Below are positions 1 to 20,197 of a stretch of 20,197 bases of DNA, piece after piece. The stretch comes from Neoechinorhynchus agilis. Taxonomy: Eukaryota > Animalia > Acanthocephala. The translations under genes were made by a program, and so were the position numbers. The stretch lies in contig JBMGUZ010000051.1 in the NCBI GenBank assembly GCA_051530055.1, forward strand, positions 1 to 20,197, in the 5' to 3' direction. The stretch's first letter is position 1, and each line of letters begins with the position of its first letter. The notes below the pieces were generated by a model that saw nothing but the letters and a program-made list of their open reading frames with translations, did no database searches and was not told the DNA's origin.

Positions 1-442
1 TTTCCTTTGAAATAATGTTGAATTTTCGTATTTCCAACGACAGCAGTATGCAAACCATGTAACAAGTTGTAGAGCTCGAAAGTTGATGGGACGAACTCAT
101 TGGCGACTTTAAGTGTCGGGCGGGCCATTCTGAAAATGTCAAATGCAGTAAGGAGCGTATATTGAGGAGCAACCTTAAAATGGGCGGATTTGGCCGATTT
201 CTGATCTCGTTCTGTATCACGTACAGTTCGGGGTTCTAGAGTTTTGGTTGTCTCGGAATCCTTTGTTTGTGTCATTTCCGTTTTATCAAAGATTGGACGT
301 TGTTTATCATCCATGTAAGGTTTTTCAACAACTGTAAGACGAGCAACGGCTGTTTCGGGGTCTTCTGGGTTTGAAGGAGTGACTCGATTCATGCCTGATT
401 CTCTATCGTAATTGCGTCTCATATTTGGACAACAAAAGAAGT
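1..442 (-). other. Endogenous viral element, partitivirus-like capsid N-terminal fragment, copy 1 (ATG at 422; frame runs off the left edge)
   Basis: Translates as MRRNYDRES...RPTLKVANEFVPSTFELYNLLHGLHTAVVGNTKIQHYFKG. The N-x-FVPS-xxx-LY-xx-L pattern resembles the N-terminal conserved block of alphapartitivirus coat proteins as I recall it. Intronless. Matches 18615-19056 with 3 substitutions seen by eye. Confidence 0.6.
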
Positions 443-686
443 ACGGACCTAAACGAGAATTACCATTGGGTGGTGGAGCAGTCACCTCGGGGTAGTTATC
501 CGTAGAGAGAACTGCCCGCATCCGGGCGAATGTGGCAGGAGAGCCATCCCGATAGTGGTCGAGTGCCGCTGAACCGCACAACGTCAGGTAAGCCATCTTT
601 TCATTCCGACGACGGAGTAGGGGCGCAACATGACTGACGGTGCTTAGGAGGGGGTGAAGTCCATACGCGAAACTTGCCCAGATCCA
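443..686 (-). other. Virus-like segment fused in frame upstream of the capsid N-terminus (possible capsid C-terminal part)
   Basis: Stop-free from 686 to the window edge in the frame of ATG 422 (first ATG at 596): WIWASFAYGLHPLLSTVSHVAPLLRRRNEKMAYLTLCGSAALDHYRDGSPATFARMRAVLSTDNYPEVTAPPPNGNSRLGPYF. The ending RLGPYF recalls the GP[FY]W motif near partitivirus capsid C-termini. Not in the ORF track because no stop lies in the window. Confidence 0.35.
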
Positions 687-808
687 TCAGATTATCATAC
701 TATAACACCCCGTCGAGGCCCCAAAGACACGAAATGGTGGAGAGGATCTTGCGGGTTAAAGCTCATAGCGTAAATACGAGAGACCGAAGATACCTCTACC
801 AGGTTTCA

Positions 809-1664
809 CTACAACCGCTCACTTAGCTCGCGCCACAACTCATTGTACTCAGCACCGATTAAACCGGAAGTAGAATAAGAAAGGCCTAGAGAAAGACAAA
901 TCGGCCCATAGCTTTCAACCATATGGGGCATAACACCGAAGTAATAGTGTAAAGCCTTCTTCTCTTCAACACTCTCCCCCCTATAGAAAGGACAATTGAT
1001 CTGGGCCGCTGCTCTAGCTTTTTCGCCAAGAAAGATGTCATTATCTTTGGCTGTGAGACCCACTTCGTGGAGGAAACCGAGCGTAGTGTTTGGAAGAGTT
1101 CGGAAAAGGGAGTAATTCCCAGCCAAGGCAGTAACGATCTTAAAAACGTGGTCAGCTGATTGTAAAGACTTAACGGTCATCTGATACCCTACCGGCACAT
1201 AGGGTCGCGAGACTGGATTGCCGTTAATGGAATGCATAAGGCGGTTCCATTCTTCAGAGAGCCTCTCGGCATAGCCATCACCACCAGCTAGAACGGAGGA
1301 GATGTAAGAGCTTGTGAAACTGCTCACACCGTTTCCAGCTAGAGTGGAGATAGCATCTGGCGAGAGCCATCCCGAAGTACTGAACTGCCGAAAGTGCCTA
1401 TTTCTAAGCGAAGAGAGAAGTGTAGTGCGCCTAGTGGCGCGCCATTCGAGATTTTCTATTAACTCGCCCTGGCCATTCAACGTGTCCAACTCCTTACAGA
1501 ACGCAGCGCACAAACGCTGATTACGGGAGTTAAGCCCATGTGCCAAGGCGTGCAACATAGGTGGATTATTTCTATGGGAGAAACAAAGACCCATAAGTCG
1601 TTTCTTCGAGGTGCCAATCTTATTAAGAAGATAATGAGCACGCACTCGAACATCGTTACGAATC
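809..1664 (-). CDS. Intronless virus-like ORF of unknown family, 5'-truncated and fused to the 121-bp repeat (ORF track 809-1708)
   Basis: 284 aa open from IRNDVRV to ELSERL*. It has no introns in a genome with dense short introns, is more GC-rich than host intergenic DNA, and sits inside the EVE mosaic. The first 15 aa of the 299-aa ORF come from the satellite. 1327-1664 recurs at 19249-19586. Confidence 0.5.
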
Positions 1665-2287
1665 AAGGTGGTCGTTGCCACACAAATAACAGAATTTTTA
1701 AGTACCAATCATTGAATTGTCTATATCATGTTCCTCATTGCTATTCATAAACACAAACTTCCTTCTGTTGATCGTCAGGAACCCCAAAGTAGTCGTAGCC
1801 ACGCGAATAACAGAATTTTTAAGCGCCAATCATTGAATCGTCTATGTCATGTACCTCATTGCTATTCATAAACAGAAACTTCCTTCTGTTGTACTTCAGG
1901 CATCCCAAAGAAGTCGTTGCCACACAAATAGCAGAATTTTTAAGCACCAATCATTGAATTGTCTAAGTCATGTACCTCATTGCTATTCATAAACACAAAC
2001 TTCCTTCTGTTGCACGTCAGGAATCCCAATATGGTCGTTGCCACACAAATAACAGAATTTTTAAGCGCCAATCATTGAATCGTCTAAGTCATGTACCTCA
2101 TTACTATTCATAAACACAAACTTCCTTCTGTTGCACGTCAGGAATCCCAAAGTTGTCGTTGCCACACAAAGAACAGAATTTTTAAGCGCGAAACATTGAA
2201 TTGTCTAAGTCATGTACATCATTACTATTCATAAACACAAACTTCCTTCTGTTGCACGTCAGGCATCCGAAAGTAGTCGTAGCCACA
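1665..2287. repeat. 121-bp tandem repeat array, about 5.1 units
   Basis: The motif gtcgt(t/a)gccac recurs at 1671, 1792, 1913, 2034, 2155 and 2276 (period 121). Units differ by scattered substitutions. Confidence 0.97.
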
Positions 2288-2387
2288 TTTACTCAAAATT
2301 TTCTCCATTATGACCGTAATTAGTTAAATCATTGGAATGGTCAAGTTTCGCACCACGTACATTTTAGGGCTTGCTTGGTGTATCGCG

Positions 2388-2686
2388 CAGACAGTGGTTG
2401 TCATGGTTTTTATTTTAACGTATCTTATATCGAAATTGTATTCGTTTAGCATTATCGCCCAAAGCACTAACCTTCCGTTGGTCATCTTGCTGAGGTCCCT
2501 CTGGTACCTGAATATGTGCTTTAACGGTTGGTAATCAGTTTCCAACACAAAATGTCGCCCATAAAGGTATTAATGAAACCGCTTGATTGCGTGCACGATG
2601 GCCAAGGCTTCTTTGTCTATAGTAGCATATCGCACTTCAGTTGGATTAAGTTTTCGTGACGTCAACATTATTGGAACTTTTTTGTT
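2388..2686 (-). mobile_element. Ty3/gypsy LTR retrotransposon pol relic (RNase H domain)
   Basis: Translates as VPIMLTSRKLNPTEVRYATIDKEALAIVHAIKRFH*YLYGRHFVLETDYQPLKHIF...RLVLWAIMLNEYNFDIRY, matching the Ty3/gypsy RNase H pattern (SR.L...E..Y...EKEALA, YLYGR.F...TDH.PL, RW...L..Y.F.I.Y). In-frame TAA at 2570-2572. Confidence 0.88.
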
Positions 2687-2689
2687 TCA

Positions 2690-5110
2690 ATAGCGAAGAT
2701 TGTATCAATTAAATTTATTATATGAAAATTTTCGGCGTTTTCGTTGGCCTTCTTCGGTCACTCTAAAATTACAGTAGAATCAAATTTGAGAGCGTCTTAA
2801 TTCTATTTATCGGGGGTATTCTGAGGTTCAATTTATAGTCGGCTTTGTTGCCAGGAAACGTGTTTGTTCGCTGGATCATTATCGCTTCGATCGTCACTCT
2901 ATCGCGCTTTACGTCAGTGCGGGCCAGTACTTCGGTGCCATCAAAATTGATCGCATGTCCACTGCTATTGATGTGGGACACTATTGGCGAACTTACATCC
3001 GTCTTTTTGTCCACTGCTCTTCTGTGCTCGGCAATCCTTTTTAAATTGATGGTTTGTCCCACATATGAGAGATTGTAATTGGAACATGAAATCTTGTATA
3101 CACATCCGACCGGTACCTCCTCATTTTTCGGCCGGAGTACTCCTTGGAGAGTCCTGCCCTTTTGCTTAAACGTAGCGCACGCTTTGTCTCTATCGATTCT
3201 GTTGATCAGCGAATCTATCCCCGAATTCCATTGAACATCGACGAATGGCGTTTCAATGTAGCACTTCTTTTTCTCTTGATTGATTGTTCTCACATACGAA
3301 GCATACTTAGCCCTTCTCCTACATTTCTCAATGTATTTCTTTGGGTATCCACTCACTTTGAGATTGTTTAATAAATCCAATATAGTTCACAATTAAGGCG
3401 TACTGTATCCGAACAATATCGAAATGCCCTGATGAACATCGATCGGACTATTGCCAATTTGTGTTTGATCGGCTGAGCAGATATCCACGGAACAACCATG
3501 TGCGGAAACCCTTGCTTCCTGTAGACCGATGTCATAAAACCACTATTCGAACCTTTTGTTACTTGTACATCCAGAAATGGTAGAGACTCATTTTCCTCCT
3601 CTTCCATTGCCCATATTATATTTTGGTGGCAGCTATTCAGTTCCTTGCTCAGTTGTACAGTTGAACTTCTATTGGGATCCAGAATAATGAACGTATTGTC
3701 CACATATCGTAGCCAGAGCTTCACATCATTTAATTCTGACAAGTGTTCATCCCATTTTCTGATGTATATCTCAGCCAATAGTGGGTATAATGGGTTTCCC
3801 ACATCGCTAGCCCATCCGCCTGGTCATAATTCACACCCTCAAACTCAATGTTTGAATATTGTCTACAGAATTCAAGAAGCTGGCGCCAATTATTAGCTGA
3901 GAGCTTCCATTCTGTACATTTTTCGACCAATAGGTTTGTTGCTAGCTCAATCCCCTCCTCCACGGGTATCTTTGTAAATAAGGACGTTACATCCGCCGAA
4001 ACCATGAGACCGGTTTCGTTTGGATTCACCCTGCCCAATCGATCAATGAAATCTACACCCGAAGTGACCACATGGTCCGATGCCGGAAGGAGCTGTTTGA
4101 TAAATCCGGATAGTTTTCTCGACAACTTATAGTTATAGGATGAGTGTGCGGCGATGATCGGACGCGCTTTGACGGGTGTTTTGTGGATCTTTGCAAATAA
4201 ATACATTTTCGGCGTCTTAGCATTCACGGATCGTATTCTTTTAAACTCTTCTTCTGGTAGACCCTTCTGTTTCATTAATTTCAGAAGTAATCTGTTGAGT
4301 TCGTTCTCGCGTTTATTCGTGGGGCAGAAATCGAGCTTCTTGAATTCGTCAGCCTGTAGAAGTTCCATACCAAGTCTGTTGAACATTTCTTCGTTTGCCA
4401 CACAAAATCCATGTCCTTTATCGATTTTCAGTTTACGTAATTCATTCCGTGCCTTGATTACTTTGGGTCCAGTCAACATCTTTCCTGTTATATTCGAACC
4501 ACGATTCCTTCCGTTCTTAATAGCCATTTTGCAACTTCTTTCCAACTCCCATAATGGGATATTTTCGATTTGAATCGAAAGGTCATACACCATTTCCGCC
4601 ATCTTAGTTCTGAATTGTAGGGTTCCGATTCTCGGGGTCGGGATAAACTCAGGGCCGAATGACAAAAGTTCCAATACTTCTTCAGGCAGTATAATCTTCG
4701 ATAGGTTGATGACCTTATCTTTGTTCTCCGACGGAATGAATAGATGTCCATCGGCGAGCTTGAGAATTTCTGCCAAGTTATCGACCTCCATAATCAGGAT
4801 ATTACACCATTCGTCGTCCGTCAAGCAACCCAGAATACCACGATTGTTCTCTAATTGACGCTCAAGATGTTTCCTTTCTTTTTGGAGTTCCTTAATAGCG
4901 TTGTTCAATAACCAAGTTTGCATCGACTTCTGGGCTTTTGAGCCATCGAACCCATACGCCACAGATTGTAGTTCCAGAAATGAAGGAAGTACTTCATACC
5001 GTTTACAGCTTTCAAGGAATTCCGATGCATTTTTGTTGCGAACCATTTTCAACGATAATTTCTCCATTAGACGCAGTTTATCGCAAATCCGAAAGCAAAT
5101 TTTGAATTAG
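2690..5110 (-). mobile_element. Penelope-like retroelement (RT + GIY-YIG endonuclease), decayed
   Basis: RT motifs KxHK..ARPII, SADVTSLFTKIP, DGLAMGNP and LRYVDN, followed by GIY-YIG (CVYKISCS...YVGQT, RIAEH, HINSSGH, EAIMI). Split into ORFs 3730-5067, 3368-3802 and 2769-3380 by a 2-bp TG insertion near 3803 and a frameshift near 3375. Catalytic YVDD reads YVDN (3695-3697). Confidence 0.92.
2723..2760 (-). ncRNA. Degenerate minimal type I hammerhead ribozyme candidate at the PLE 3' end
   Basis: Minus strand reads TGA-CCGAAGA-A-GGC-caacgaaaac-GCC-GAA-AATT-T-TCA: core CUGANGA with U4 to C, stem II GGC/GCC, GAAA, palindromic AATT in place of helix III, and short stem I TGA/TCA. It lies just after the EN stop codon and is followed by AATAAA (2714-2719). 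Confidence 0.45.
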
Positions 5111-6216
5111 CGCGTCAGGAATTACTAAACGAACAAAATTGTATATGGCTAGCTAGCGTTATTACTTTCTCTAATCGTATTTGTTCAATTCTTTAAAAGT
5201 CATAAACGTGAAAGATCATCAAATTTGCAAACGTCAACAAATGATGGAAACAATGCATCAATAATCACGGTTGTTTCTCCAAAAACTGAAAAACAAATAA
5301 CTCAAGAACTATTGCAGCTATCGCAAATCCGAAAACAGATTTTGAATTAGCGCGTCAGGAATTACTAAACGAACAAAATTGTATATGGCTAGCTAGCGTT
5401 ATTACTTTCTCTAATCGTATTTGTTCAATTCTTTAAAAGTCATAAACGTGAAAGATCATCAAATTTGCAAACGTCAACAAATGATGGAAACAATGCATCA
5501 ATAATCACGGTTGTTTCTCCAAAAACTGAAAAACAAATAACTCAAGAACTATTGCAGCTATCGCAAATCCGAAAACAGATTTGGAATTAGCGCGTCAGGA
5601 ATTACTAAACGGACAAAATTGTATATGGTTAGCTTACGTAATAACGTCGGAAATCGCATTTGTTCAATTCCTCAACAGTCATAAACGTGAAAGATCATCA
5701 AATTTGCAAACGTCAACAAATGATGGAAACAATGTTGCATCAATAATCACGGTTGTTTCTCCAAAAACTGAAAAACAAATAACTCAAGAACTATTGCAGC
5801 TATCGCAAATCCGAAAACAGATTTTGAATTAGCGCGTCAGGAATTACTAAACGAACAAAATTGTATATGGCTAGCTAGCGTTATTACTTTCTCTAATCGT
5901 ATTTGTTCAATTCTTTAAAAGTCATAAACGTGAAAGATCATCAAATTTGCAAACGTCAACAAATGATGGAAACAATGCATCAATAATCACGGTTGTTTCT
6001 CCAAAAACTGAAAAACAAATAACTCAAGAACTATTGCAGCTATCGCAAATCCGAAAACAGATTTGGAATTAGCGCGTCAGGAATTACTAAACGGACAAAA
6101 TTGTATATGGTTAGCTTACGTAATAACGTCGGAAATCGCATTTGTTCAATTCCTCAACAGTCATAAACGTGAAAGATCATAAAATTTGCAAATGTCAACA
6201 AAGGATGGAAACAATG
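5079..6216. repeat. 240/242-bp tandem array (about 4.7 units) continuous with the PLE 5' end
   Basis: tcgcaaatccgaaa at 5081, 5321, 5561, 5803 and 6043. Two internal variants occur in order A,A,B,A,B. Confidence 0.95.
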
Positions 6217-6725
6217 TCCATCCTTATAATGCTCACTTTTGCTCTTCCACTCAACTCTGAAAGCTCGGGTTGGAACGAAAAATCTATGTCGGAACGTCCT
6301 CGTCTTTAGCAATTGAATCGGACGGAGAGTTGTTCCACACCCCACCTGACAAGTGAATTAACAGCCAGATTCTCCCGTTTCGATCAATCCCTGAACAACA
6401 TGAAGTTGAGGACAAGGCACTCTTCAAGGGCCGCAGCTGCAATTGTTCCTAACCTCACCAGCAGCATCCGCTTTTTCGATCTTCGAATTGTCCATTTTAT
6501 TTCGAATTGTCCAGTAAACAAAGCGCTAATAAAGGTGAAATTACCAAAGATATTAAAACGTTCTCTATATTGGGAAACACATTATTGATAAACAAAATGA
6601 ACGACAAGCGTCTAGTCAATGTTGAATAAATACCGGAAACAAAGGCGAGCACTCACCTAAAAGCGGTTTGCGATCTCCTCGAATTCTATAAGATCGACTT
6701 GAATATCGAATAAAGAAATAGGAAA

Positions 6726-7318
6726 ATGAGGATTCCCATTATCGTACTGATTATCGCGATAGGACTACTAGTCAACATATCAGCGCTTTCCGTCCTACCG
6801 GAAACGAAAAACAAAATTACGCCGTTCTCCTATTATAGCGATTCGCCAATACTATTTAAATCCAGAGATGGAGAAAATCAGCAAAAAGACGACGAATCCG
6901 ATGAGATGAGCAGTGGACCTCCAATGATGGACGAAAGCTCGTCAAATCAAGGTGATTTTAATGATATCGATTCATCAGAAGAGAACGAAGCCATATCGAA
7001 GCCTGGAGAAAATCAACAAAAAGACGACGAATCCGATGAGATGAGCAGCGGACCTCCAACGATGTACGAAAGCTCATCAAATCAAGGTGATTTTAATGAT
7101 TTCGATTCATCAGAAGAGAACAAAGGCATATCGAAGCCAGGAGAAAATCTGCAAAATGACGACGAATCCGATGAGATGAGCAGTCGACCTCCAGTGATGG
7201 ACGAAAGCTCTACAACATCTCCTTATCTAAAGTTGCCTTTTCTGTCAAAGAAAGACGTCGGTAACTTTTAAACAAATGGATTTTGCTGTGTCCATTTTCC
7301 ATCTATTGAGAAAAATAG
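6726..7318 (+). CDS. Secreted acidic (D/E/S/N-rich) repeat protein, about 180 aa
   Basis: Hydrophobic signal peptide MRIPIIVLIIAIGLLVNISA, then about 2.5 copies of a 45-aa unit. A probable terminal intron 7261-7310 (GTAACT...GAG, 50 nt) would end the protein ...DVEK*; unspliced, it stops at 7271. Confidence 0.75.
6870..7212 (+). repeat. 135-bp coding tandem repeat
   Basis: ggagaaaatc at 6870, 7005 and 7140; unit GENQQKDDESDEMSSGPPMMDESSSNQGDFNDIDSSEENEAISKP. Confidence 0.95.
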
Positions 7319-8412
7319 GCCGATATTTACTACTCCGGAGCGTCACTTTATTCAACAATTCTAAGCTATCCGGGCAATGTTAACAATGGACGACTTCAAG
7401 AAACGTTGTAGCTCCGGGATATTTTAGATTATCCTGCTCTCGATCAGTCGGACCGAGAAGCTTACAACTTTAAGCATTTTGTTGAGTTTAAATTATTTTC
7501 ATGTAATAAATTATCAGTAGTCATTTATGGAGGAAGTCTAATAATGACGAGGGTACGGATGATGAAGGTGTCAATGGCTTTAAAAAGTTGATACTTTGGT
7601 AACAGTATCATTAATCAACGTCATTTCGTTTCCCAAACACTGATTTTTCATTGACCGCTTTCAATGATTATATGGATTTCCATCACGAATCGACCGCCTT
7701 TAATAATCGCGACCGCTAAAAAATTGATTCATCGAAAAACTTCACCAACCATTAAGTTGAACTTTTTAAAAATCAATGCTCTGTAGTTCGTTAATCAATA
7801 AACTCTCATAAATGAGAATTGTGCGAAATTTAAAAGGTCTTTTTGGCGGACATTCATAAAGATTTCATCGTTACGCCATGGAATACTCGCTGTTCCTTTA
7901 AGGAATTAAATAATCCGATTCGAACCATTTGATGATTTCGGTTCTTTTTTTCGTCAATAATACAAGTAAAAGAACGTTCGTAAGATGTTATCGATGACAA
8001 CATTCACCAATCTGTTCGCCGTGAATATCGCGCTGATTATCGATATTATCCACGAAATCCCAAAAACCTAAGCGCTGATTCCGTATATCGATAAGTTACG
8101 TTGAATCTACGAGCAGATTTAAATGCTAAAATAGATCCTTAATTTTTGTTAAAGGCTTCCATTGTGTTCATGATGAACATTTGAACGAAAGGTGCCAATT
8201 TGTTTTTTGAAATGGGAATTTTTTCAACAAAGACCGAAGAAGGAAAAACCTAAGCACTTAATAATTTAAAAATTTGCGTGCTTAAAACAAGTTTTAATTC
8301 TTTAAAAGGAGACTAACAAACTGTTTAACGCCATTCCAAGCCACTGGGCAAAAGGAAAAACCTCAGTACTTCATCATTTTAAGTTTGGATGAAATGAAAA
8401 AATATCTTAGTT

Positions 8413-10555: not shown

Positions 10556-12248
10556 ATGAAGCCGTTAGTATCTGCAGAGGTTTTGGGATCTTGTGAGTTC
10601 GTATCACTAGAGCCACGAAGATTATCATGTCTGGAGCTATCGGTTTGATTGCATTGGCATCGATTATTTCTCTGATTGTTGCGCTCACCGTTACTTTTGT
10701 TCACAAGGACGCCGTGACCTCTGCTCCAACTGGTGATGCAAAAGGTAAGCACTTTTTAGAAACTTTAATAGCTTATTACGCTTTTTCGTTGCAGCTCAAT
10801 GTAAGTTCGATTTGCTTTGTTAGAAATCAATACCGAGTCCTATAAGTTTCCAAAGCCAAAACATTGTACGAAGTAAAAGGAGGAGTCAATGGCGGACAAA
10901 GATTTATTCAGGCGGGAAAATACATGCGAAGAAACTTTGATTTCCATCATGAACCAAAGGTTAGTCGGGATTCTTAAAAGGCTACAGTATTTATTTACGA
11001 TTAAGATGGAATTTCGCGTCGAAGAACCGATACGAAATGTTCAAAAAAGAGGGTCAATGCGAGTTCGTGATCTAAAGGGTCAATGCGAGTTCGTGATCTA
11101 AATAAAATATTTGAACTTGCGGTAAGACGATTCAGGTCTGGCTTTCGTTTTGAATTTCATTTTTCTATTAGATGAATGGTCGAGTGGAAGAGATGGCTCT
11201 GAATGTCTTACCTATACACCGACCTCATGGAGTTCAAGTAGAAATGGTCAATGAGCTACCAGGGTAAATCATAAGATAAAGCTTCAAGTTTTTTATTATC
11301 TGCCTATAAAAGAGAACAATTTGAAGTGATTTACCGCGCATTCTACAAGCTTCCTTGCGATTGCTCTGAAAAACGCCTTGAGGATCTTATTGTAATTCTG
11401 GCTCAAATCGAGATTTTGACCAACGATGGAAAACGTGATGTTCTAAACAGTCTTAAATCGGATATATTGGAAGGTATTTTTAAACTTTAAAGAAAATCTC
11501 ATACTGCTTTTTCCTAACTTATCGATGATAATTATGTATATGACGACGCATTCGACGATATATTAGAGGATGATGATCCATGGGAACAAGAGTGCGGAAT
11601 ATGTAAGGAGTGATGTCTTCTTTTATCCTTATTTTGTTAATTCATTTTAAAGTGTACGAAGTCATAGTAACTTACACGGATGACGGAACACTGGGGGATA
11701 AAGTAGAGATTCTCAATTAAATGCTAGGATATAATTCTTTTAAAAGCGTTGAGAATTCCTACCATGATTTGAATACACTCGAACAAGATGAATTCAATAA
11801 CGATGCAATTACGCTCGCCCTTTCTCAAGGATCCGAATATTCGAGTGACCAGGATCCTGTTTATGTCGAGTTCGACAGCTATGGTCAGCGCCCCGTATTC
11901 TTATTGTATAACTTATTTTCATTTCAGAAGTCATTAATCCCGACAGCCCAACCGAGTACAAAATGCACCTCCGAATGTTCATTGATCTAACATGTGAGAC
12001 TTGCATTGAAACCATAACCGAGAAGCTCAGCAAAGAACTCACTATTGTCTTATCAGCGAGTACTGTCGTCTTGCCAGCCGGTGGAAAAGTTGAATTCATT
12101 GGTTGGTTCTGCTAAAATTCCTTCTATTCTCATATTCACATATATAGATTCCAATACAAGACTCAGCCATGACCAAGCTTTGAGTTTTTACGAAAACAGG
12201 GAAGCAATCGATCCTGAGAAATTCACAACACCGGCACCAGTTCAATAA
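10556..12248 (+). pseudogene. 12-exon gene for a signal-anchored/secreted protein of about 378 aa (repaired), with two apparent lesions
   Basis: Inferred introns: 10564-10610, 10745-10794, 10801-10846, 10960-11005, 11122-11171, 11264-11312, 11474-11524, 11603-11652, 11703-11753, 11884-11927 and 12102-12147 (44-51 nt, all GT donors). Splice phases give a continuous frame (MKPATKIIMSGAIGLIALASIISLIVALTVTFV...PAPVQ*) once the 26-bp duplication at 11050-11101 is removed. The intron 7 acceptor is CG rather than AG. Confidence 0.72.
11050..11101 (+). repeat. Perfect 26-bp tandem duplication inside exon 5
   Basis: agggtcaatgcgagttcgtgatctaa at 11050-11075 and 11076-11101; causes a frameshift with TAA at 11099-11101. 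Confidence 0.97.
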
Positions 12249-12986
12249 AGCTGATCACGGATACTCATTAGACCAGATCGTTAATACCTTCAAAATCATC
12301 TCAAAGTTACACTGTCATATTGCATGAATTTCCAAACAAGAGTTTCTCCGCATTTCTAATTTTTGACTAATAATTACGGTCATTAATTCAGTAATCGCTT
12401 TTACGTCGCTAATCTGTTATTACCAGTTATATCAGTCGCTGTCAAATTGCAACATCCTCCAAAAAATATTGATTTTATATCGTTAAAACGCTGAGTTGAT
12501 TCTTAACTAAATCCTAGTTTGCTCGCCGTAGAATTCTTTTATAAAAGATAACTTCCAAACTCTCGATTTGAACATAATCGATTATAGAATTTTCCGTTGG
12601 GCCAAAATCTAGACATCGATAAAAGGTAGCGCTCTCGTCTACAGGCCACCGCTACTTGATGTGATGTATTTCAATAGTTATTCAGCGGCCGTGTGGTGTG
12701 CGCGTTCATATTGCGCTTGATATGTCGAAAGTTCAACGCCACCGGTCGCTGAGTTAGACGGCGGCCCCTTCAAGTGCGGCTTAGCGCCTCCGTTGTGCGA
12801 AAGTTCCGTCCTGAATCTGTACCTATGCCGAAATCCCGGGTTTTAAAGTCGACTCTTTAATAATAAAAACCCTCGGGACACTTGCATCGAGAGGGATCAG
12901 GATAAGTCGAAGGGATACAAAGGAATATGGCCGTGAGGCCCAAAAGAAGATGTCACAAGCAAACAAGAGTGTATGAGGCCTTGGCG

Positions 12987-14618
12987 TTTGGTACGTGTGG
13001 GTATCGAAACTTTTAAATTTTTCGTAAAAACCATGATTACAGAAAGCTCAAAAGATTAACGCGATGGATATTTTCGCCTTTATGCAATCATTAACACAAT
13101 CACCGAGCCCACATTCGTCCTTTGTTTTTTGTTTTGAGCAACAAAACCGATACGTATTAATTCGCAATATCGTTCCTTGCTCGATTGCCTTTCCCAAGGA
13201 GACGGATAACATTTTCAAATAGAGACATGAATCCAGAAATAAGCAAAATCCTTTTACGTTTAATTCAACGATTGAGCGATAATATTCCGACAAGTGACAG
13301 TCAACGGTTTGAAAACCACATTTTAATTATGGAGGCTACAATGGAATCCATGCGGATTCTAGCGAGCCAAAATGCGACGAGCAAACCAACGCCAGGTGAG
13401 TTCCACAAAAACCTCATATCGATTCCATTATTTCAAATGAGTTTAGGAGTTTTATTTCCTTCAATGAATTCAACTCGAAGTAACGAGCCAGTAAATCTTG
13501 ATAGAATATTTGCCGGTTTGTTGAGAATGGCACCTTCGAACACTGCGGCGTCCGCATTGTCAGTGGCCGCAAACTTAGCAAACGCCCAGCAACAGTGTTT
13601 CCGAATAACTTCCGAACAGTCCAAGGAGCAAAAATCGGCCGAAACAAATCGAATGATTGGCGATAACAACCAAGAACTTGAAGATTTAATGCAATTCATA
13701 ATTCAAAATGCCGATGCCATCGCTGAGAGTCGTCCGCCGCAAATCTTTCCGAGAATAAATGATAATAATCGAGTCGGCGTCATCAGTCTCGAGATGGTAG
13801 ATGAACGCCAAGATTCAGTCGGCAATCCTCAAGCTTTTCTTCAAAAAACATCGCAGCCAACAATGCCTTGGATTTGTGCAAAATGCGGAACTTTCTTAAC
13901 TCCATCGTGGCATCTATATAAAGGTTCGGTCTACTGCTTTTCATGCGCTGACTCGGTCGCATTTTCCGAATGGGAACCGGCCATTCGCGAACTATTTGAA
14001 AAATTCCTGGCTTCAGAATGGATTCCTCCTGTTCTCGATCCGGACCACAGCACAAACATTCACCAAAGAACTCAAATCTCAACACCACGAAGATCGGCAA
14101 AGTCACAGGGGGAACTCGAGATTGAAGGCACAACAAAAATAAGTGAACCAACTCGGGAAAACATTCCATCGGTTCACAATTCGCCGGTTGAAAAATCATC
14201 TGAGGTTTTTATCCATCAAACTGACCATCAAACGGAAAATAATTTGTTTCAGGCAAATGAAGGAGCCACCAATTCTCTTCCACCAATAGAAATTGATAGC
14301 AGTACAAACAGAACAAAAGATAAAGAAGGAGAATCTCAATGTAGAGATAGTTCGTCTGAGAGCAATTTTGTAAGACGAGAGTAATATTGATAAATAAGTT
14401 TTTATTTGTACGTCTGCATTAAGTTATTTCCAAAATACGATATCGAACGGTTGTTAGAGTGAAATCAGAATTGTAAACTTTAAGCGATCCGGGCTTTGTA
14501 GATGTGTTCTTCACAATCCCGGATATAAAATATTTTATCGAGATTTTTCGAAAGATAAAGCCTCGCCAAGCGATGCAGAGCTCCATGAGGTTTGTCGCCT
14601 AACAACTTTCAACAACAA
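12987..14618 (+). repeat. 1.63-kb direct duplication, copy 2
   Basis: Collinear with 8413-10044 at offset 4574. Confidence 0.97.
13227..14384 (+). CDS. Orphan protein with a divergent GATA-like C4 zinc finger, copy 2
   Basis: Same length as copy 1 with 13 aa differences from ATG to stop. Finger CAKCGTFLTPSWHLYKGSVYCFSC at 13875-13946. Confidence 0.7.
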   Translation: MNPEISKILLRLIQRLSDNIPTSDSQRFENHILIMEATMESMRILASQNATSKPTPGEFHKNLISIPLFQMSLGVLFPSMNSTRSNEPVNLDRIFAGLLRMAPSNTAASALSVAANLANAQQQCFRITSEQSKEQKSAETNRMIGDNNQELEDLMQFIIQNADAIAESRPPQIFPRINDNNRVGVISLEMVDERQDSVGNPQAFLQKTSQPTMPWICAKCGTFLTPSWHLYKGSVYCFSCADSVAFSEWEPAIRELFEKFLASEWIPPVLDPDHSTNIHQRTQISTPRRSAKSQGELEIEGTTKISEPTRENIPSVHNSPVEKSSEVFIHQTDHQTENNLFQANEGATNSLPPIEIDSSTNRTKDKEGESQCRDSSSESNFVRRE

Positions 14619-15723
14619 CAATAATAACGACGACAACAATTGCAAACAAATTAAATTCCTTTTTTATAGGAATTTTTGTGACCACAAATAGCAAAGACGA
14701 TTTTCGGCGTATTTTTTGGAAACCAATCTCAGGTTTTGTTTTTCAATTGAAACTTAGCCGGGCTGTGGTAATGATAAAGAAAATCTTTATTTTTGAGCTT
14801 TCATCGTCTTGCTCGAAAATCTACAAAGGCTCATGGAGATGTGAAGTTTGCTAGCGACATCGAAGCCGGGACTTTAGCAGTTCTTGGGCTTTTTTGAGAT
14901 GATTTCCTATTTTTCATTCTCTACGGCCCGGAATGTAGGTTCCTTGGCGATTCCATTGCTGACAAAATTCGATTTGCACTTTATCGAAACTTTGTTTACG
15001 AAATTAACTGAGAACGATATTTGGTCAATTGCAATCGCGATTTCGCTTGGATGGGCCGTTGATATGATAAAGAAAATCTTTAATTTCGAGCTTTCGCAGT
15101 CTTACGGCTGACAGGAAACGTTCGTAAACTCCTGAATCCGGACGCAAAATCTATGCTATCTCCCGTACTTGAACCTTTAGAAAATAGCCGAAGAATCAAA
15201 GGATTCAATTTATTTTAAGATGAGCTTTCTAAAGACTATTTTCAAGTGCTGGATTTGTCCAAAAATTATCCAAAAAAGTGAATTATTGTGTTAAACAAAG
15301 AAGCAAACTGCGACTGTAGAGGTTTCTTTTTTTATCCGAGTCAAAAACGTATCGATGCTTAATTTTAAGAATCATTCATATTATTGATTTCAAGTTAAGT
15401 CTCCGCTGGATTTAATGAAAGTTCTGGACTTTTTATAAAAGCTAAAATGAATTTATTTGATTATTTCGCTACAACAGGAAAATTTAGCACCCGAACAAAA
15501 ATCGATGGTTTATTGAAACCAATCAATAATAGCGAATATGTGTGTGAAAGCGTCAATCGCTCACAATAAACTTTATTTCAAGCTAACATCTCGCTTTATC
15601 TGTGATTCCAAGCTAAGAAACCCCAAGGATGTCTTCATCCCATTGTTGGAACCACAGAATACGCGAGGATTCGTTAATCCCCGCTTTTCACTTGCCCCAT
15701 TAAGCAATCCGATTCAGTTGAAC

Positions 15724-17415
15724 TCAATTTTCTCCTTGAAAATTGCCTGCATTCTCATCCAAGCGTTTCGCAGCTTCCTCGTCGACCCGATTATAGTCTT
15801 CCAAACTATGTATATAAAACAACTTAGGATCGATTGTTGTTATTGTCCTGAAAAGCAAATCCTCTGTAACGGGCCTTTCAATACTTTCTTTGATCGCCAT
15901 TGCAGTTTGGAAAGTATTGGCGATGTCTTTATCGTTTCTGACCCGAATCATCTTCCATTCACCTCCCTCGACAACGCATTCGATTATCTTTTCATTGCAT
16001 TGAAACAATTGAGCCGTGAGTCGAATCCGGGCGAACGGTTCATTGTACTTTCTAACATACAGAAATCAACCAGAACCGATTTTTCGCTTTTCCATATCGT
16101 GGCCAGGAATTACCAATTTGAAGTCGACCGAATTCAATCGTGTAGGTTTATACTTTAGCAGCTCGTAAAATGTTCCAAAAATATAAGGCATATAAACGGG
16201 CTGAAATATAAGACCGTCTGTCTCATGAGGGAGTTCTCTTTTAAACTTCTCATTCAAAAGATGTTTACTGTGTTTGAGGCCGTAAAAATCCTTTCTTCGA
16301 ATCCCAAACGGTTCTCGACTTCGGTCTATCGCTCCGCATTCCATTGCACGATGACGAGGCAAAATAATCTCTCTCAAAATGAGTTCCAAGCGTTTATCAA
16401 AGTCGAGTTCTTTACCGGCAGGATGCCCGTTGAATGCCAAGACGTCGAATATAAGAAATCGAGGAATCCGTTTGCCTTCAACTACATCTTCCACCATCTC
16501 TCCATCAAGTAAAGTCTGACGAAGATGATCTTTGGTGCCACGTTTCGTCACAAACGTCAGGTTTCTCACTTTAAAGATTGAATTGCGCCGGTCAATCATA
16601 TAAATTTCGTTTTTCGCTCGAATTAAACACAAATACCGGGTTCCGTCATCCTTCCAGCTTACGCGATAATCCAACTGCCGCAATGTTTGGATATTATTGA
16701 GTGTCATTGATACCGGCTGGCTACCGATGAATCCTCTTCCATGACTTTCTGGACAAAGGTCCTTTATGTTTTGTCGAATTTCGTTGATTTTTCTTCGATC
16801 TCTGTCGTATCTTAGTCGATAGATGAACGGAACATCTACCGAGAAGCCCTCTGATAAACCTGTTGGTTGGTTTACTTCCTCATTCGAACTATCCAGAATG
16901 GAAGGATTTGGTTTTTCCGCTAGCGCGTCGATTTTCCTTTTTGATTTAAAATCTGCCGACTTTGGGTCAACTGCAACCCTTTTTCTACGTGGACTTTGTT
17001 CCCGGGTTTCCGAGTCCGTTGTTTGCGCCATTTGATTCGATCTTTTACGAAAACCGATGTCTTCATTTGATCTTTTTCTCGATTTCATGTGTTCATCCTC
17101 CTCTTTAATTATTTGAGTCTTGAGCGAAGCATTTAACTCAGTTTGATGATCAGCGGACGATTGCGAAACTCTTCGCTTCGACCGAATGCTGTGCTCGTCC
17201 GAATCACTTATGGATCGTTTTCGTCCACCAGCGAACTTCTTTCTCTTAATATCGGCGATATCGATTACGTCGTTTGCTTCTTGCTTTGATCCATAATTTG
17301 TACTGGTTTCGATACTCACGGCTTCTGTCGAATTCATGGTGGATGCCGGATCCTTGGTATCAATTTTGCGCTTTAATAGCACGCCGGTTCGCCAACTCGA
17401 GTACCGTAATCTCAT
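15724..17415 (-). pseudogene. RNGTT: mRNA capping enzyme guanylyltransferase domain (RNGTT-like), intronless, no triphosphatase domain, one in-frame TGA
   Basis: FIGSQPVS, motif I WKDDGTRY (KxDG), III LLDGEMV, IIIa FLIFDV, IV DGLIFQP, V LKYKP, LNSVDF and VI RVRNDK. ORFs 16066-17415 and 15724-16008 are in the same frame, joined by TGA (16066-16068) plus FLYVRKYNEPFARIRLTAQ. No HCxxGxxR motif; the N-terminal ~190 aa are K/R/S/E-rich low complexity. Confidence 0.88.
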
Positions 17416-18614
17416 AAATCTATAGAATGCTTTAATCGATGTCTTATTAATGATTTTGATTTAATCGCATCCTTATCTTTGCAGCAGTTCGATCTTTTAG
17501 TGAAGAATTCAACCTCGAACACATGACGGTCTCTGAGTCTACTCATTTTGGGTAAAATCCAACGGCAAATGGGAATCTTCGTAAGGGCGACCACTTCTCC
17601 GATGGGTTCTGGAGGGTGATTACGAACAAGAAACCGTATCTTCTTCTAATGTGGCAGCCGGCTAACGAAGCCGTGGAATAAATTTCTTATCAAGTTCTGT
17701 GAATTTCTATTAAAACCTTTCCCTTTTATTAGAATGTCGCATGTTCATTACAATAAAATTCGGTAGCACGTTCATTCGAAGGCAACGCTTGAGGACGATT
17801 TCAGCATCTCCTGATTCTCAGTGTATTTGATCATTTCGAAGAAAATCGGCTTGCTCAATTGAATTTTGATCAGTCGGTGGATTGTCCACTGATTTCTAAA
17901 CCGCTTGTTATCTTTTTCGAATTTATCCAAATTAAGCAACTGAAAACAAATGCGGCTACAAAATACTAATTAAATAGCCCGTGAGATTTTTAGGTTTAAA
18001 GGAAATTTCAGTTCAATTCTTCCTTTGGGAGCATCGAGTCCAGTTAGACAAAATGCGAACATCGAATAAATAAAATGACTTTATATTTGAATTCCCGTCA
18101 CTTAAACGCAATGGGTTTTTAGCGTTTCAATTTTTAGGCCATGAATCGATATTTCTGATTGAAAAATAACGATTTTTTATATATTGCCACCATAAAGTAT
18201 CGATTCTAAATTTTCATTCGAAGAAGCTTAAAACTGTCCGTCGGTACAATAATAAACATTTTCTATTCAGCACTTTAGAAAACCCAATAAAATCGCTTTA
18301 AACCTAAGACTTTGAGCAAGCAAACAAAATGACTACTTTTCCCGAATTGATTTATCGATAAAAAGTCGACTAAAAATTTTAAATGTGCGCCGAATAATAA
18401 AACGGACCCGAATTCTGTCGTTTTTTCGTAACTTCCAAAACGCCGTCCGCTTTCTAAAGCGCTGCACCCGCATTCCTCGCGTCGTTCTGTTTTGTTCTCC
18501 GGTGAATCGAGCGACTTTGGCGATGGTGGAAAATCGTTTACGTTCGTACCGAGGACGAATGGAAGCGTCTCAATGCAAGTGAGTAATATTTTGAAATTGT
18601 GGGAAATCTCTGTT

Positions 18615-19056
18615 TTTCCTTTGAAATAATGTTGAATTTTCGTATTTCCAACGACAGCAGTATGCAAACCATGTAACAAGTTGTAGAGCTCGAAAGTTGA
18701 TGGGACGAACTCATTGGCGACTTTAAGTGTCGGGCGGGCCATTCTGAAAATGTCAAATGCAGTAAGGAGCGTATATTGAGGAGCAACCTTAAAATGGGCG
18801 GATTTGGCCGATTTCTGATCTTGTTCTGTATCACGTACAGTTCGGGGTTCTAGAGTTTTGGTTGTCTCGGAATCCTTTGTTTGTGTCATTTCCGTTTTAT
18901 CAAAGATTGGACGTTGTTTATCACCCATGTAAGGTTTTTCAACAACTGTAAGACGAGCAACGGCTGTTTCGGGGTCTTCTGGGTTTGAAGGAGTGACTCG
19001 ATTCGTGCCTGATTCTCTATCGTAATTGCGTCTCATATTTGGACAACAAAAGAAGT
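18615..19056 (-). other. Endogenous viral element, partitivirus-like capsid N-terminal fragment, copy 2 (ATG 19036)
   Basis: Same sequence as 1-442. After about HYFKG the frame appears to read into flanking sequence and stops at 18275 (253-aa ORF, probably chimeric). Confidence 0.6.
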
Positions 19057-19248
19057 TGCCGAATAGTATTTTAGCTCATTCTCGGGGGAGGAATTAGTCC
19101 GGACCGCCGGAAGATCGGATACTCTAAGAAGGCCGAACTGTATTAAAGGATAGAAGTAATAGCCGGGGTCGTAGTTCCATGACAGCCTGATACCTGACGT
19201 GTAAGGAACTTGTAATCTACCCATGAATTGGAAATCAAGCGTATTGTT
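19057..19248 (-). other. Virus-like segment unique to EVE copy 2
   Basis: Stop-free in ORF 19033-19251 (NNTLDFQFMGRLQVPYTSGIRLSWNYDPGYYFYPLIQFGLLRVSDLP...). It has sharp junctions with shared blocks on both sides and no ATG start. Family not recognised. Confidence 0.35.
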
Positions 19249-19855
19249 CACCGTTTCCAGCTAGAATGGAGATAGCATCTGGCGAGAGCCATCCCGAAGT
19301 ACTGAACTGCCGAAAGTGCCTATTTCTAAGCGAAGAGAGAAGTGTAGTGCGCCTAGTGGCGCGCCATTCGAGATTTTCTATTAACTCGCCCTGGCCATTC
19401 AACGTGTCCAACTCCTTACAGAACGCAGCGCACAAACGCTGATTACGGGAGTTAAGCCCATGTGCCAAGGCGTGCAACATAGGTGGATTATTTCTATGGG
19501 AGAAACAAAGACCCATAAGTCGTTTCTTCGAGGTGCCAATCTTATTAAGAAGATAATGAGCACGCACTCGAACATCGTTACGAATCTTATGGTCTATACT
19601 ATCAGATTTTTCCGCTATGGTTGTGGGCCCAACGAAAGCAGCTTCATACTTGAAGTTTCGCATGGCAGCCTCCATGTCGCGGGTGAATGATCCATTTTTG
19701 TCGGTAGGAACAAAAGTACTGAAATTGCGGTACTTTTCGCGTCTTTCCTTCTTTTCCACTCGAACATGCTCCATATCGCCAAGAGTGGCTTTAGCTCTAC
19801 TTATATAGGCCAGGAAAGCAGTGCCGAGATCAATTGGACTAGTCATGTACCTCAT
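19235..19855 (-). CDS. Virus-like ORF, copy 2: extra N-terminal 87 aa plus the shared block, 3'-truncated
   Basis: MTSPIDLGTAF...DHK continues in frame into IRNDVRV...AGNG (shared with copy 1), then ends 4 codons after the junction at 19249. Confidence 0.5.
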   Translation of the reverse strand: MRYMTSPIDLGTAFLAYISRAKATLGDMEHVRVEKKERREKYRNFSTFVPTDKNGSFTRDMEAAMRNFKYEAAFVGPTTIAEKSDSIDHKIRNDVRVRAHYLLNKIGTSKKRLMGLCFSHRNNPPMLHALAHGLNSRNQRLCAAFCKELDTLNGQGELIENLEWRATRRTTLLSSLRNRHFRQFSTSGWLSPDAISILAGNGEQYA

Positions 19856-20197
19856 TGCTATTCATAAACAGAAACTTCCTTCTGTTGTACTTCAGGCATC
19901 CCAAAGAAGTCGTTGCCACAGAAATAACAGAATTTTTAAGCGCCAATCATTGAATTGTCTATATCATTTTCCTCATTGCTATTCATAAACACAAACTTCC
20001 TTCTGTTGCACGTCAGGAATCCCAAGGTGGTCGTTGCCACACAAATAACAGAATTTTTTAGCACCAATCATTGAATCGTCTAAATCATGCACCTCACTGC
20101 TATTCATAAACACAAACTTCCTTCTGTTGCACGTCAGGCATCCGAAAGAAGTCGTAGCCACGCGAATAACAGAATTTTTAAGCGCCAATCATTGAAT
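19841..20197. repeat. 121-bp tandem repeat array, second locus (runs off the right edge)
   Basis: Same unit as 1665-2287; gtcgt(t/a)gccac at 19910, 20031 and 20152. Confidence 0.97.

What the first reader, a model, noticed from the sequence alone, without database searches (positions are those of the whole stretch)
1..20197. Two differently shuffled copies of a partitivirus-like EVE mosaic bracket the window
Seen: on the minus strand, copy 1 is satellite-B-C-Z-D (2287 to 1) and copy 2 is satellite-A-B-Y-D (20197 to 18615). B is 1327-1664/19249-19586 and D is 1-442/18615-19056, each over 99% identical by eye. A, C, Y and Z each occur in one copy only. Known: RNA viruses without a DNA stage leave nrEVEs through retroelement reverse transcription, often as template-switched mosaics. 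Inferred: a recent, multi-fragment endogenisation of a dsRNA virus that was duplicated and re-cut, possibly a small-RNA template locus.
Basis: partly seen in the sequence, partly recalled or inferred. Interest (0 to 1): 0.8.

Follow-up and report, generated by a model that had tools for sequence, protein, structure and literature searches.

The report
Broken toti-like virus relics, duplicated
The two ends of this thorny-headed-worm (Neoechinorhynchus agilis) contig carry two recently duplicated, differently deleted, non-functional remnants of an endogenised toti-like double-stranded-RNA virus, not a partitivirus, lodged in a 121-bp satellite; this is a known kind of genomic fossil in a host group where it had not been reported.

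Summary
Both repeated blocks lie where the finding says (338 bp with 1 mismatch, 442 bp with 3 mismatches). Each copy abuts a 121-bp satellite, and A, C, Y and Z are single-copy. The window is a whole unplaced contig of the acanthocephalan Neoechinorhynchus agilis.

The blocks are viral. An exhaustive protein search found only N. agilis paralogues and ORF1 of Schistocephalus solidus toti-like virus 1. A sibling contig (L002) holds a far more complete 7.96-kb insert inside one satellite unit, with a 1543-codon ORF followed by a 980-codon RdRp ORF. That single-molecule layout fits a toti-like virus, not a bisegmented partitivirus.

The blocks are not shuffled. In both copies the identifiable pieces keep the order of the full element, so they are different deletion derivatives. 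Neither copy retains the polymerase core.

The copies sit in a tandem segmental duplication of about 17-18.6 kb, also seen on contig L003. At least three viral lineages occur in this genome. Synonymous sites between them are saturated while pN is 0.08-0.16, which points to several endogenisations.

A small-RNA role is untested. The joins peculiar to this contig need long-read confirmation. This is a new member of a known kind, of moderate interest.

The parts
1..1663 (-). EVE copy 1. A truncated, broken remnant: most of the ORF1-like central region, then block D, which includes about 66 codons from the start of the RdRp frame. It is cut by the contig end.
   Evidence: tblastn with P0001, P0002 and P0018. 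It is 100% identical at protein level to part of L002 ORF-A. The satellite-to-element join was read. Breaks were counted.
1664..2287 (.). 121-bp satellite array (5.2 units) directly upstream, in element sense, of copy 1.
   Evidence: The unit has no similarity to the element itself.
18615..19841 (-). EVE copy 2. A broken remnant: the first part of the ORF1-like region (A and B), a roughly 68-codon piece from the middle of the long frame (Y), then block D with about 66 codons of the RdRp frame.
   Evidence: tblastn. Its 5' join to the satellite is the same as in L002. Its 3' join to the dispersed repeat is the same as in L003.
19842..20197 (.). 121-bp satellite array (at least 2.9 units) upstream of copy 2. 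It runs off the contig end.
18100..18606 (-). Dispersed repeat of about 450-500 bp immediately downstream of copy 2. This is a neighbour, not viral sequence.
   Evidence: Copies occur in L001 (4), L003 (2), L004 (2) and L005 (1).
16066..17415 (-). Host-type mRNA capping enzyme ORF with the guanylyltransferase domain only. This neighbour belongs to the duplicated unit.
   Evidence: Pfam PF01331 at 2.8e-59. The closest solved structures are mammalian capping enzyme. The L003 paralogue has all three domains. About 1.5 kb holding the paralogue's 5' part is missing here.
2769..5067 (-). Retroelement-like ORF remnants between the satellite and the 240-bp tandem array. This is a neighbour.
   Evidence: Weak GIY-YIG hit below the Pfam cut-off. 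The ORFs were read. The resemblance to a Penelope-like RT motif rests on my own knowledge and no profile confirmed it.
2288..18099 (.). Spacer between the two copies, about one unit of a 17-18.6-kb tandem segmental duplication. It holds tandem arrays of 240 bp and 135 bp, a 1.6-kb internal repeat and the capping-enzyme ORF.
   Evidence: The same order of features is seen in L002 and L003 at 96-99% identity.

Best explanation
The two window ends are two recently duplicated, independently deleted, non-functional copies of an endogenous viral element (EVE). The element derives from a monopartite toti-like dsRNA virus of the acanthocephalan Neoechinorhynchus agilis.

Shown:
- A viral insert of about 8 kb (long ORF1-like frame, then an RdRp frame) sits inside one unit of a 121-bp satellite on sibling contig L002.
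- The satellite plus insert belongs to a host segment of about 17-18.6 kb that is repeated in tandem.
- The units carry versions of the insert that share outer joins but differ by internal deletions and truncations.
- The window holds about 1.08 units, so one remnant lies at each end.
- Neither window copy keeps the polymerase core or an uninterrupted long frame.

Inferred:
- Viral RNA was reverse-transcribed by a cellular retroelement enzyme, and the cDNA was captured at a break in the satellite. No poly(A) tail or target duplication is present, and about 24 bp of the target unit are lost.
- The segment then duplicated at the DNA level. Deletion and recombination between copies of two viral lineages produced the present mosaics.
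- The window copies are most likely inert relics.
For: Viral origin:
- The 299-codon ORF of copy 1 has a single word-search hit, a 511-aa N. agilis protein.
- The exhaustive HMMER search returned 14 N. agilis proteins plus ORF1 of Schistocephalus solidus toti-like virus 1 (E 4e-5 over 1.84 billion proteins).
- Pairwise BLASTP gave 4e-12 with collinear stretches. hhalign gave 96% probability, E 2e-9.
- L002 holds ORF-A (1543 codons) followed by ORF-B (980 codons). ORF-B scores above the Pfam gathering cut-off for RdRP_1 (32.5 bits) and RdRP_4 (25.5 bits), and one GDD lies in the matched stretch.
- G+C of the insert is 0.476 against 0.387 for the flank.

Host context:
- The satellite, retroelement remnants and capping-enzyme gene lie on the same contig.
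- The insert interrupts one satellite unit.

Duplication:
- Window, L002 and L003 share the flank order at 96-99% identity.
- Copy 2 shares its 5' join with L002 and its 3' join with L003.

Collinearity and breakage:
- Shown: Several lineages:
- pS is 0.73-0.83 against pN 0.08-0.16.

No host-level constraint:
- L002 and L003 differ by 1 synonymous and 5 non-synonymous changes.
Against: - The RdRp frame could not be placed. No relatives were retrieved and there was no PDB hit. RdRP_1 scores higher than RdRP_4, so 'toti-like' rests on ORF1 homology, layout and size.
- The first 241 bp of block D match nothing in any related locus. Their origin, and why both copies join different upstream pieces to them, is unexplained.
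- EVE parts are about ten times less diverged between contigs than their flanks. A simple 'integrate, then duplicate' history does not predict this.
- The assembly comes from pooled worms (PMC12690905). Window, L002 and L003 could therefore be alleles rather than neighbouring units.
- Four joins are seen only in this contig.
Confidence: 0.8

Rival explanations
1. The remnants derive from a partitivirus-like (bisegmented, Durnavirales) virus.
For: ORF-B of the sibling copy scores higher against Pfam RdRP_1, the family that holds partitivirus and picorna-like polymerases, than against RdRP_4 (32.5 against 25.5 bits).
Against: - The ORF1-like frame and the RdRp frame are adjacent on one 7.96-kb insert.
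- At 980 codons the RdRp frame is far longer than partitivirus polymerases (own knowledge).
- The only viral relative of ORF1 is from a toti-like virus.
- No partitivirus protein appeared in any search.
Confidence: 0.04
2. One of the two copies, or their placement on one molecule, is an assembly artefact. Haplotypes or paralogous units from pooled worms would have been stitched together at shared repeats.
For: - The contig is unplaced and only 20 kb long.
- The assembly is a hybrid MaSuRCA/Flye build from pooled males and females (PMC12690905).
- Both contig ends lie in repeats, and the left end coincides with a fork between the L002 and L003 paths.
- Four internal joins are unique to this contig.
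Against: - The 5' join of copy 2 is independently present in L002 and its 3' join in L003.
- L003 independently shows the same tandem unit structure, with EVE sequence at both ends of a unit of about 17 kb.
- Copies 1 and 2 differ by real substitutions.
Confidence: 0.15
3. The locus is a functional, host-maintained element. It would be either a small-RNA (piRNA-like) source that targets a circulating toti-like virus, or a co-opted viral protein.
For: - Both copies have the same orientation in a repeat-rich, satellite-embedded region.
- EVE parts are about ten times less diverged between contigs than their flanks.
- The sibling copy keeps two long uninterrupted frames.
- Several lineages imply repeated exposure to the virus.
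Against: - The window copies are truncated and out of frame.
- The few differences between duplicated copies are mostly non-synonymous (1 synonymous to 5 non-synonymous).
- No expression or small-RNA data could be examined.
- Low divergence is equally explained by recent gene conversion.
Confidence: 0.1
4. The blocks are not viral but belong to a host multigene family or a transposon that a tapeworm virus once captured.
For: - The family has at least 14 gene models on three chromosomes and several unplaced contigs in N. agilis.
- It has no Pfam or PDB match.
Against: - It is physically linked to an RdRp frame in L002, and to RdRp fragments in L001 and L003.
- It is intronless, with G+C unlike the flanks.
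- No homologue turned up in any other cellular organism among 1.84 billion representatives.
- Saturated synonymous divergence with strong amino-acid conservation between copies in one genome is typical of separately captured virus strains.
Confidence: 0.03

Closest known systems
Toti-like non-retroviral EVEs in eukaryotic nuclear genomes (capsid-like and RdRp-like inserts reported in fungi, arthropods, nematodes and others; from my own knowledge of the 2009-2010 paleovirology papers, not re-read here)
   Same: Fragments of a dsRNA virus ORF1 and RdRp in host DNA, often truncated, multi-copy and in repeat-rich regions.
   Different: The host phylum, Acanthocephala, is new for this virus group. 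A sibling copy is nearly full length. At least three diverged lineages are present. The insert lies inside a satellite unit that is part of a tandem segmental duplication.
Schistocephalus solidus toti-like virus 1 (SsTV1; PMC7305300), an exogenous, vertically transmitted virus of a fish tapeworm
   Same: - The layout has two frames, a very long ORF1 followed by an RdRp, on a molecule of about 8 kb.
- The central ORF1 region is homologous (27-31% identity in collinear stretches).
- The host is likewise a helminth parasite of fish.
   Different: - SsTV1 is exogenous and absent from its host genome.
- The N-terminal halves of ORF1 show no similarity.
- RdRp similarity could not be compared, because its polymerase was not retrieved.
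Mononegaviral RdRp-like EVEs of the acanthocephalan Pomphorhynchus laevis (PMC12548735)
   Same: EVEs of RNA viruses on unplaced contigs of an acanthocephalan assembly, in many copies.
   Different: The virus order differs (negative-strand Mononegavirales). That paper covered neither toti-like sequences in Acanthocephala nor N. agilis.
nrEVE clusters in piRNA-producing, retrotransposon-rich loci of Aedes mosquitoes (own knowledge)
   Same: Several rearranged viral fragments, same-strand, embedded in repeats.
   Different: No small-RNA evidence exists here. The insert is in a satellite rather than nested in LTR elements. The mosaics are explained by DNA-level deletions within a segmental duplication.

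Membership tests
Non-retroviral endogenous viral element (nrEVE) | Sequence homologous to proteins of an RNA virus that has no DNA stage | tested here: met
   The ORF1-like region matches ORF1 of a toti-like virus. An RdRp frame is linked to it in L002. The window itself keeps ORF1-like pieces and about 66 codons of the RdRp frame.
Non-retroviral endogenous viral element (nrEVE) | Physical continuity with host DNA in a DNA-derived assembly | tested here: met
   The satellite, repeats and a metazoan-type capping-enzyme gene lie on the same contig. The insert interrupts one satellite unit in L002. Further copies lie on three chromosomes.
Non-retroviral endogenous viral element (nrEVE) | Presence/absence polymorphism or an empty orthologous site | not testable with these tools
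   No reads, no individual genomes and no searchable second acanthocephalan genome were available.
Toti-like (Ghabrivirales-like) virus origin | A single genome molecule with a 5' ORF1 (structural) followed by a 3' RdRp frame | tested here: met
   L002 has ORF-A at 10001-14632, then ORF-B at 14715-17657 on the same strand, offset by one frame, within one 7960-bp insert. This is seen in the sibling contig, not in the window.
Toti-like (Ghabrivirales-like) virus origin | ORF1 homologous to ORF1 or capsid of a described toti-like virus | tested here: met
   SsTV1 ORF1 is the only non-host hit. There are three collinear BLASTP stretches, and hhalign gives 96% probability.
Toti-like (Ghabrivirales-like) virus origin | RdRp belongs to the totivirus-type family (Pfam PF02123) and groups with Ghabrivirales in phylogeny | tested here: inconclusive
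   PF02123 scores 25.5 bits, above its cut-off of 22, but PF00680 scores 32.5 bits on the same stretch. No RdRp relatives were retrieved for a tree. The AlphaFold model was too poor for a fold search.
Partitiviridae origin | Two genome segments, each with one ORF, with RdRp and capsid on separate molecules | tested here: not met
   The ORF1-like and RdRp frames are adjacent on one insert, flanked on both sides by the same satellite unit.
Partitiviridae origin | Capsid or RdRp with specific similarity to partitivirus proteins | tested here: not met
   No partitivirus protein appeared in Pfam, PDB, the word-based search or the exhaustive search. The RdRP_1 hit is generic to the picorna-like and partiti-like clan.
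LINE-type retroposition of viral RNA | A 3' poly(A) tail and a target-site duplication at the insertion | tested here: not met
   At the complete insertion in L002 there is no poly(A) tail, and about 24 bp of the satellite unit are missing rather than duplicated.
Small-RNA (piRNA-cluster-like) template locus | Strand-biased small RNAs that map to the viral fragments | not testable with these tools
   No small-RNA or RNA-seq data were accessible. The only observations are the shared orientation of both copies and the repeat-rich context.

The most novel reading that the evidence does not exclude
N. agilis carries a currently circulating toti-like virus, related to a tapeworm virus, that has been endogenised repeatedly. 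The satellite-embedded, tandemly duplicated EVE array would be kept homogeneous because it serves as an antiviral small-RNA source, or because the long-frame sibling copy is expressed. This would be the first such system in Syndermata.
Probability: 0.1. Interest if true: 0.7.

Novelty: new member of a known kind. Interest (0 to 1): 0.45.

Why it matters
- No virus of the toti-like group, endogenous or exogenous, has been described for Acanthocephala. The only EVEs reported there are mononegaviral (PMC12548735), and the N. agilis genome paper does not mention viral sequences.
- The family's only relative in a library of 1.84 billion proteins is a virus of a fish tapeworm. This hints at a virus lineage shared by unrelated helminth parasites of fish.
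- Several diverged lineages, with saturated synonymous sites under strong amino-acid conservation, indicate repeated and partly recent endogenisation. A living virus is therefore worth looking for in existing RNA-seq data.
- For genome annotation, at least 14 'hypothetical protein' models of N. agilis, some fused across copies, are EVE-derived and should be flagged.

Tried and rejected
- Pfam on all window ORFs of the two ends gave no family.
- PDB sequence searches with P0001 and with the RdRp frame gave nothing meaningful.
- The word-based protein search with the RdRp frame found nothing at E<=0.001, and nothing again at E<=10.
- IMG/VR and metagenome scans with the RdRp frame and with P0001 found no relatives.
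- Single-sequence AlphaFold2 models of P0001 and of the RdRp core were unusable (mean pLDDT 34.5 and 38.1), so no fold search was run.
- The idea that the satellite derives from the element was rejected, because there is no similarity.
- The idea that block D continues the ORF1-like frame of copy 1 was rejected. The apparent extension is 3-4 chance residues.
- An apparent 95% match of copy 1 to L002 beyond block C is a spurious low-identity extension.
- The N-terminal half of the ancestral ORF1 (alignment A2) shows no similarity to the SsTV1 N-terminal half.
- Rfam and tRNA scans of the window found nothing.
- The retroelement remnants next to the satellite could not be confirmed as a Penelope-like element by any profile.
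Full report
**1. Observation**

The repeat finder, Tandem Repeats Finder and a self-BLAST of the window recover both repeated blocks at exactly the coordinates given in the finding.
- Block B is 338 bp with 1 mismatch.
- Block D is 442 bp with 3 mismatches (recounted).
- A 121-bp satellite lies next to each copy. One array is at 1664-2287 (5.2 units). The other runs from about 19842 to the contig end (at least 2.9 units).
- Nothing else in the window matches A, C, Y or Z.
- G+C is 0.45-0.50 at the two ends and 0.33-0.42 elsewhere.

**2. Where the window comes from**

- The 299-codon ORF of copy 1 has one hit in the 5.8-billion-protein word search. The hit is a 511-aa hypothetical protein (P0001) of the acanthocephalan Neoechinorhynchus agilis, at 75% identity.
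- A cluster look-up shows that a protein encoded by the window (P0017) is on record on a contig of exactly 20,197 bp. The window is therefore a whole unplaced contig of assembly GCA_051530055.1.
- That assembly was built from pooled male and female worms with a hybrid MaSuRCA/Flye strategy and purge_dups (PMC12690905). The paper does not mention viral sequences.

**3. What the blocks encode**

- P0001 and the window ORFs have no Pfam family and no PDB relative.
- An exhaustive HMMER search of 1.84 billion representatives with P0001 gave 15 hits. Fourteen are N. agilis hypothetical proteins.
- The fifteenth is the 1696-aa ORF1 product of Schistocephalus solidus toti-like virus 1. The library-wide E-value is 4e-5.
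- Pairwise BLASTP gives 4e-12, with further collinear stretches. A profile of nine family members against it gives 96% probability, E 2e-9.
- According to its describers, that virus has two ORFs, the second an RdRp of Pfam family PF02123, and it is absent from its host's genome (PMC7305300).

**4. A much more complete sibling copy**

One cluster member (P0018) lies on another unplaced contig, JBMGUZ010000053.1 (L002).
- L002 1-9463 is syntenic with window 1671-9127 at about 98%. The sequence is inverted in locus coordinates.
- Beyond the satellite, L002 carries a 7960-bp insert with two long uninterrupted frames. ORF-A spans 10001-14632 (1543 codons). ORF-B spans 14715-17657 (980 codons), one frame offset.
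- ORF-B passes the gathering cut-offs of Pfam RdRP_1 (32.5 bits) and RdRP_4 (25.5 bits) over residues 570-749, and a single GDD lies in that stretch.
- The insert is flanked on both sides by the satellite. Comparing each flank with the neighbouring unit shows that it interrupts one unit. About 24 bp of the unit are missing, and there is no poly(A) tail and no target duplication.
- G+C of the insert is 0.476 against 0.387 for the flank.
- The satellite has no similarity to the element and is absent from the chromosomal locus L001.

**5. Toti-like, not partiti-like**

- A long ORF1 followed by an RdRp frame on one molecule of about 8 kb is the toti-like layout. Partitiviruses keep polymerase and capsid on two short segments and have much shorter polymerases (established knowledge).
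- The only viral relative of ORF1 is toti-like.
- The RdRp itself could not be placed. The two Pfam families score similarly. No relatives came back from the word search even at E<=10, from IMG/VR, from metagenomes or from the PDB. Single-sequence AlphaFold models were unusable.
- I therefore hold 'toti-like' with good but not full confidence, and 'partitivirus-like' as tested and not met on layout.

**6. Deleted, not shuffled**

Each block was mapped onto P0001/L001 and onto L002 ORF-A and ORF-B.
- B, C and Z of copy 1 are one continuous stretch of the ORF1-like region, roughly its last four-fifths.
- A and B of copy 2 are its first two-fifths.
- Y is about 68 codons from further down the long frame.
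- The last 200 bp of D are 100% identical to the start of ORF-B, about 66 codons.
- In both copies the identifiable pieces follow the order of the full element.

Breaks in copy 1:
- It lacks the 5' part, through a secondary join to the satellite at a different phase of the unit.
- It has one frame change and up to four in-frame stops, in a poorly conserved stretch.
- It has one large internal deletion.

Breaks in copy 2:
- It has no stops within its retained pieces.
- It has large internal deletions whose joins are out of frame.

Both copies keep only about 7% of the RdRp frame and lack its catalytic core.

The first 241 bp of D match nothing in any related locus, at either DNA or protein level. 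An apparent extension of homology into it is chance. This part remains unexplained.

**7. Why the copies sit at the two ends**

A third contig, JBMGUZ010000012.1 (L003), shows the same order of features twice, about 17 kb apart. The order is:
1. a 135-bp tandem array
2. a 240-bp tandem array
3. retroelement remnants
4. the 121-bp satellite
5. the EVE
6. a dispersed repeat of about 450-500 bp
7. the capping-enzyme gene

EVE sequence lies at both ends of the unit. The locus is therefore a tandem segmental duplication, and the window holds about 1.08 units.
- Copy 2 shares its satellite join with L002.
- Copy 2 shares its downstream join to the dispersed repeat with L003. Those two joins are thus independently corroborated.
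- The other four joins are seen only here.
- The left end of the contig lies within 1-2 nt of the point where L002 (RdRp continues) and L003/copy 2 (dispersed repeat follows) diverge. The right end lies in the satellite. Both are typical places for an assembler to stop.

**8. Several viral lineages**

The family occurs on at least three chromosomes and five unplaced contigs. Codon-wise comparison was made of the window type, the L001 type and the second part of L002 ORF-A.
- pS is 0.73-0.83, which is saturated.
- pN is 0.08-0.16.

The lineages therefore diverged under strong purifying selection, as expected for replicating viruses captured separately, and not as neutral paralogues.

L002 ORF-A is itself a fusion. 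A first part is identical to the window type. A second, more complete part is of another lineage, about 80% identical at protein level.

After duplication there is no sign of constraint. L002 and L003 differ at 6 sites in 2959 nt, 1 synonymous and 5 non-synonymous.

Gene models P0007, P0008, P0009 and P0013 show that the ancestral ORF1 extended some 600-790 residues further upstream. That part shows no similarity to the tapeworm virus.

**9. Mechanism**

Shown:
- a viral insert inside a satellite unit
- duplication of the host segment
- shared outer joins
- different internal deletions
- loss of the polymerase core in both window copies

Inferred:
- reverse transcription of viral RNA by a cellular retroelement enzyme
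- capture of the cDNA at a break, since there is no LINE signature
- later recombination or gene conversion among units

Retroelement remnants lie next to the satellite. A dispersed repeat follows EVEs in the same orientation at five places. Neither can be tied to the integration.

The small-RNA suggestion cannot be tested here.

**10. An oddity**

Between contigs, the flanks differ by 1.2-2.4 substitutions per 100 bp. The EVE parts differ by 0-0.18, and the first kilobase downstream by 0.24. Possible readings are gene conversion, a recent spread of the EVE-bearing stretch across units or haplotypes, or selection. I could not tell them apart.

**11. Comparison and verdict**

- Toti-like EVEs are a known kind.
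- Acanthocephalan EVEs reported so far are mononegaviral (PMC12548735).
- This is a new member of a known kind: a toti-like EVE family in a new host phylum. It has a nearly full-length sibling copy, several lineages, and a tapeworm virus as its only known relative.
- The window itself holds two inert, deleted remnants.

Interest is moderate, at 0.45.

Noticed in passing
window 16066-17415 (-); L003 15669-17921: A metazoan-type mRNA capping-enzyme gene is part of the duplicated unit. The L003 paralogue has the DSPc, guanylyltransferase and C-terminal domains. The window copy shows only the guanylyltransferase domain and lacks about 1.5 kb that holds the 5' part. It is probably a truncated duplicate.
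   Followed up: partly
window, L002 and L003: EVE parts against flanks: EVE segments and about 1 kb downstream differ by 0-0.24 substitutions per 100 bp between contigs. The surrounding unit differs by 1.2-2.4. Gene conversion, recent spread and selection are all possible and unresolved.
   Followed up: partly
window 202-442 and 18816-19056: The first 241 bp of block D have no match in any related locus at DNA or protein level. Both copies join different upstream pieces to the same start of this stretch. The origin is unknown.
   Followed up: yes
L006 (IMGVR_UViG_3300004137_000018) 4515-4592; residues 1498-1567 of its 2107-aa ORF: An alpha-like RNA-virus contig (Viral_helicase1, RdRP_2, dsrm) shares a block of about 30-67 residues with the EVE ORF1 and with SsTV1 ORF1. 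The block is built around a W-N-x-L-M-H-x-x-N-G-N motif (pairwise E about 1e-6, hhalign 60%). It may be a small module shared between unrelated RNA-virus lineages.
   Followed up: partly
window 18100-18606; L001 (4 copies), L003 (2), L004 (2), L005 (1): A dispersed repeat of about 450-500 bp lies downstream of EVEs in the same orientation at five places, and interrupts the RdRp-like part of the L001 copy. It is very abundant, so chance adjacency is possible. Its class was not identified, and no tRNA or Rfam match was found.
   Followed up: partly
window 2324-5067 (-): Retroelement-like ORF remnants sit next to the satellite. There is a weak GIY-YIG hit (E 5e-4, below cut-off), RT-like motifs that recall Penelope-like elements (own knowledge), and a short RT_RNaseH-like fragment (E 0.027). 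No profile confirmed any of these.
   Followed up: partly
window 5079-6217 and 6869-7210; L002 2833-4074: There are two further tandem arrays, one of 240 bp (4.7 units) and one of 135 bp (2.5 units here, 9.2 units in L002). The 135-bp array lies inside an open frame, with a weak SH3BGR hit on that ORF.
   Followed up: no
window 8413-10048 and 12987-14621: A 1.6-kb direct repeat (98% identical) carries a 399-codon ORF with no Pfam or PDB relative.
   Followed up: partly
L002 10001-17836 (gene model P0018) and other N. agilis models (P0002-P0015): At least 14 annotated 'hypothetical proteins' of N. agilis are EVE-derived. Some models fuse two EVE copies or bridge the two frames with a small intron. 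The start codon of L002 ORF-A lies in the satellite.
   Followed up: yes
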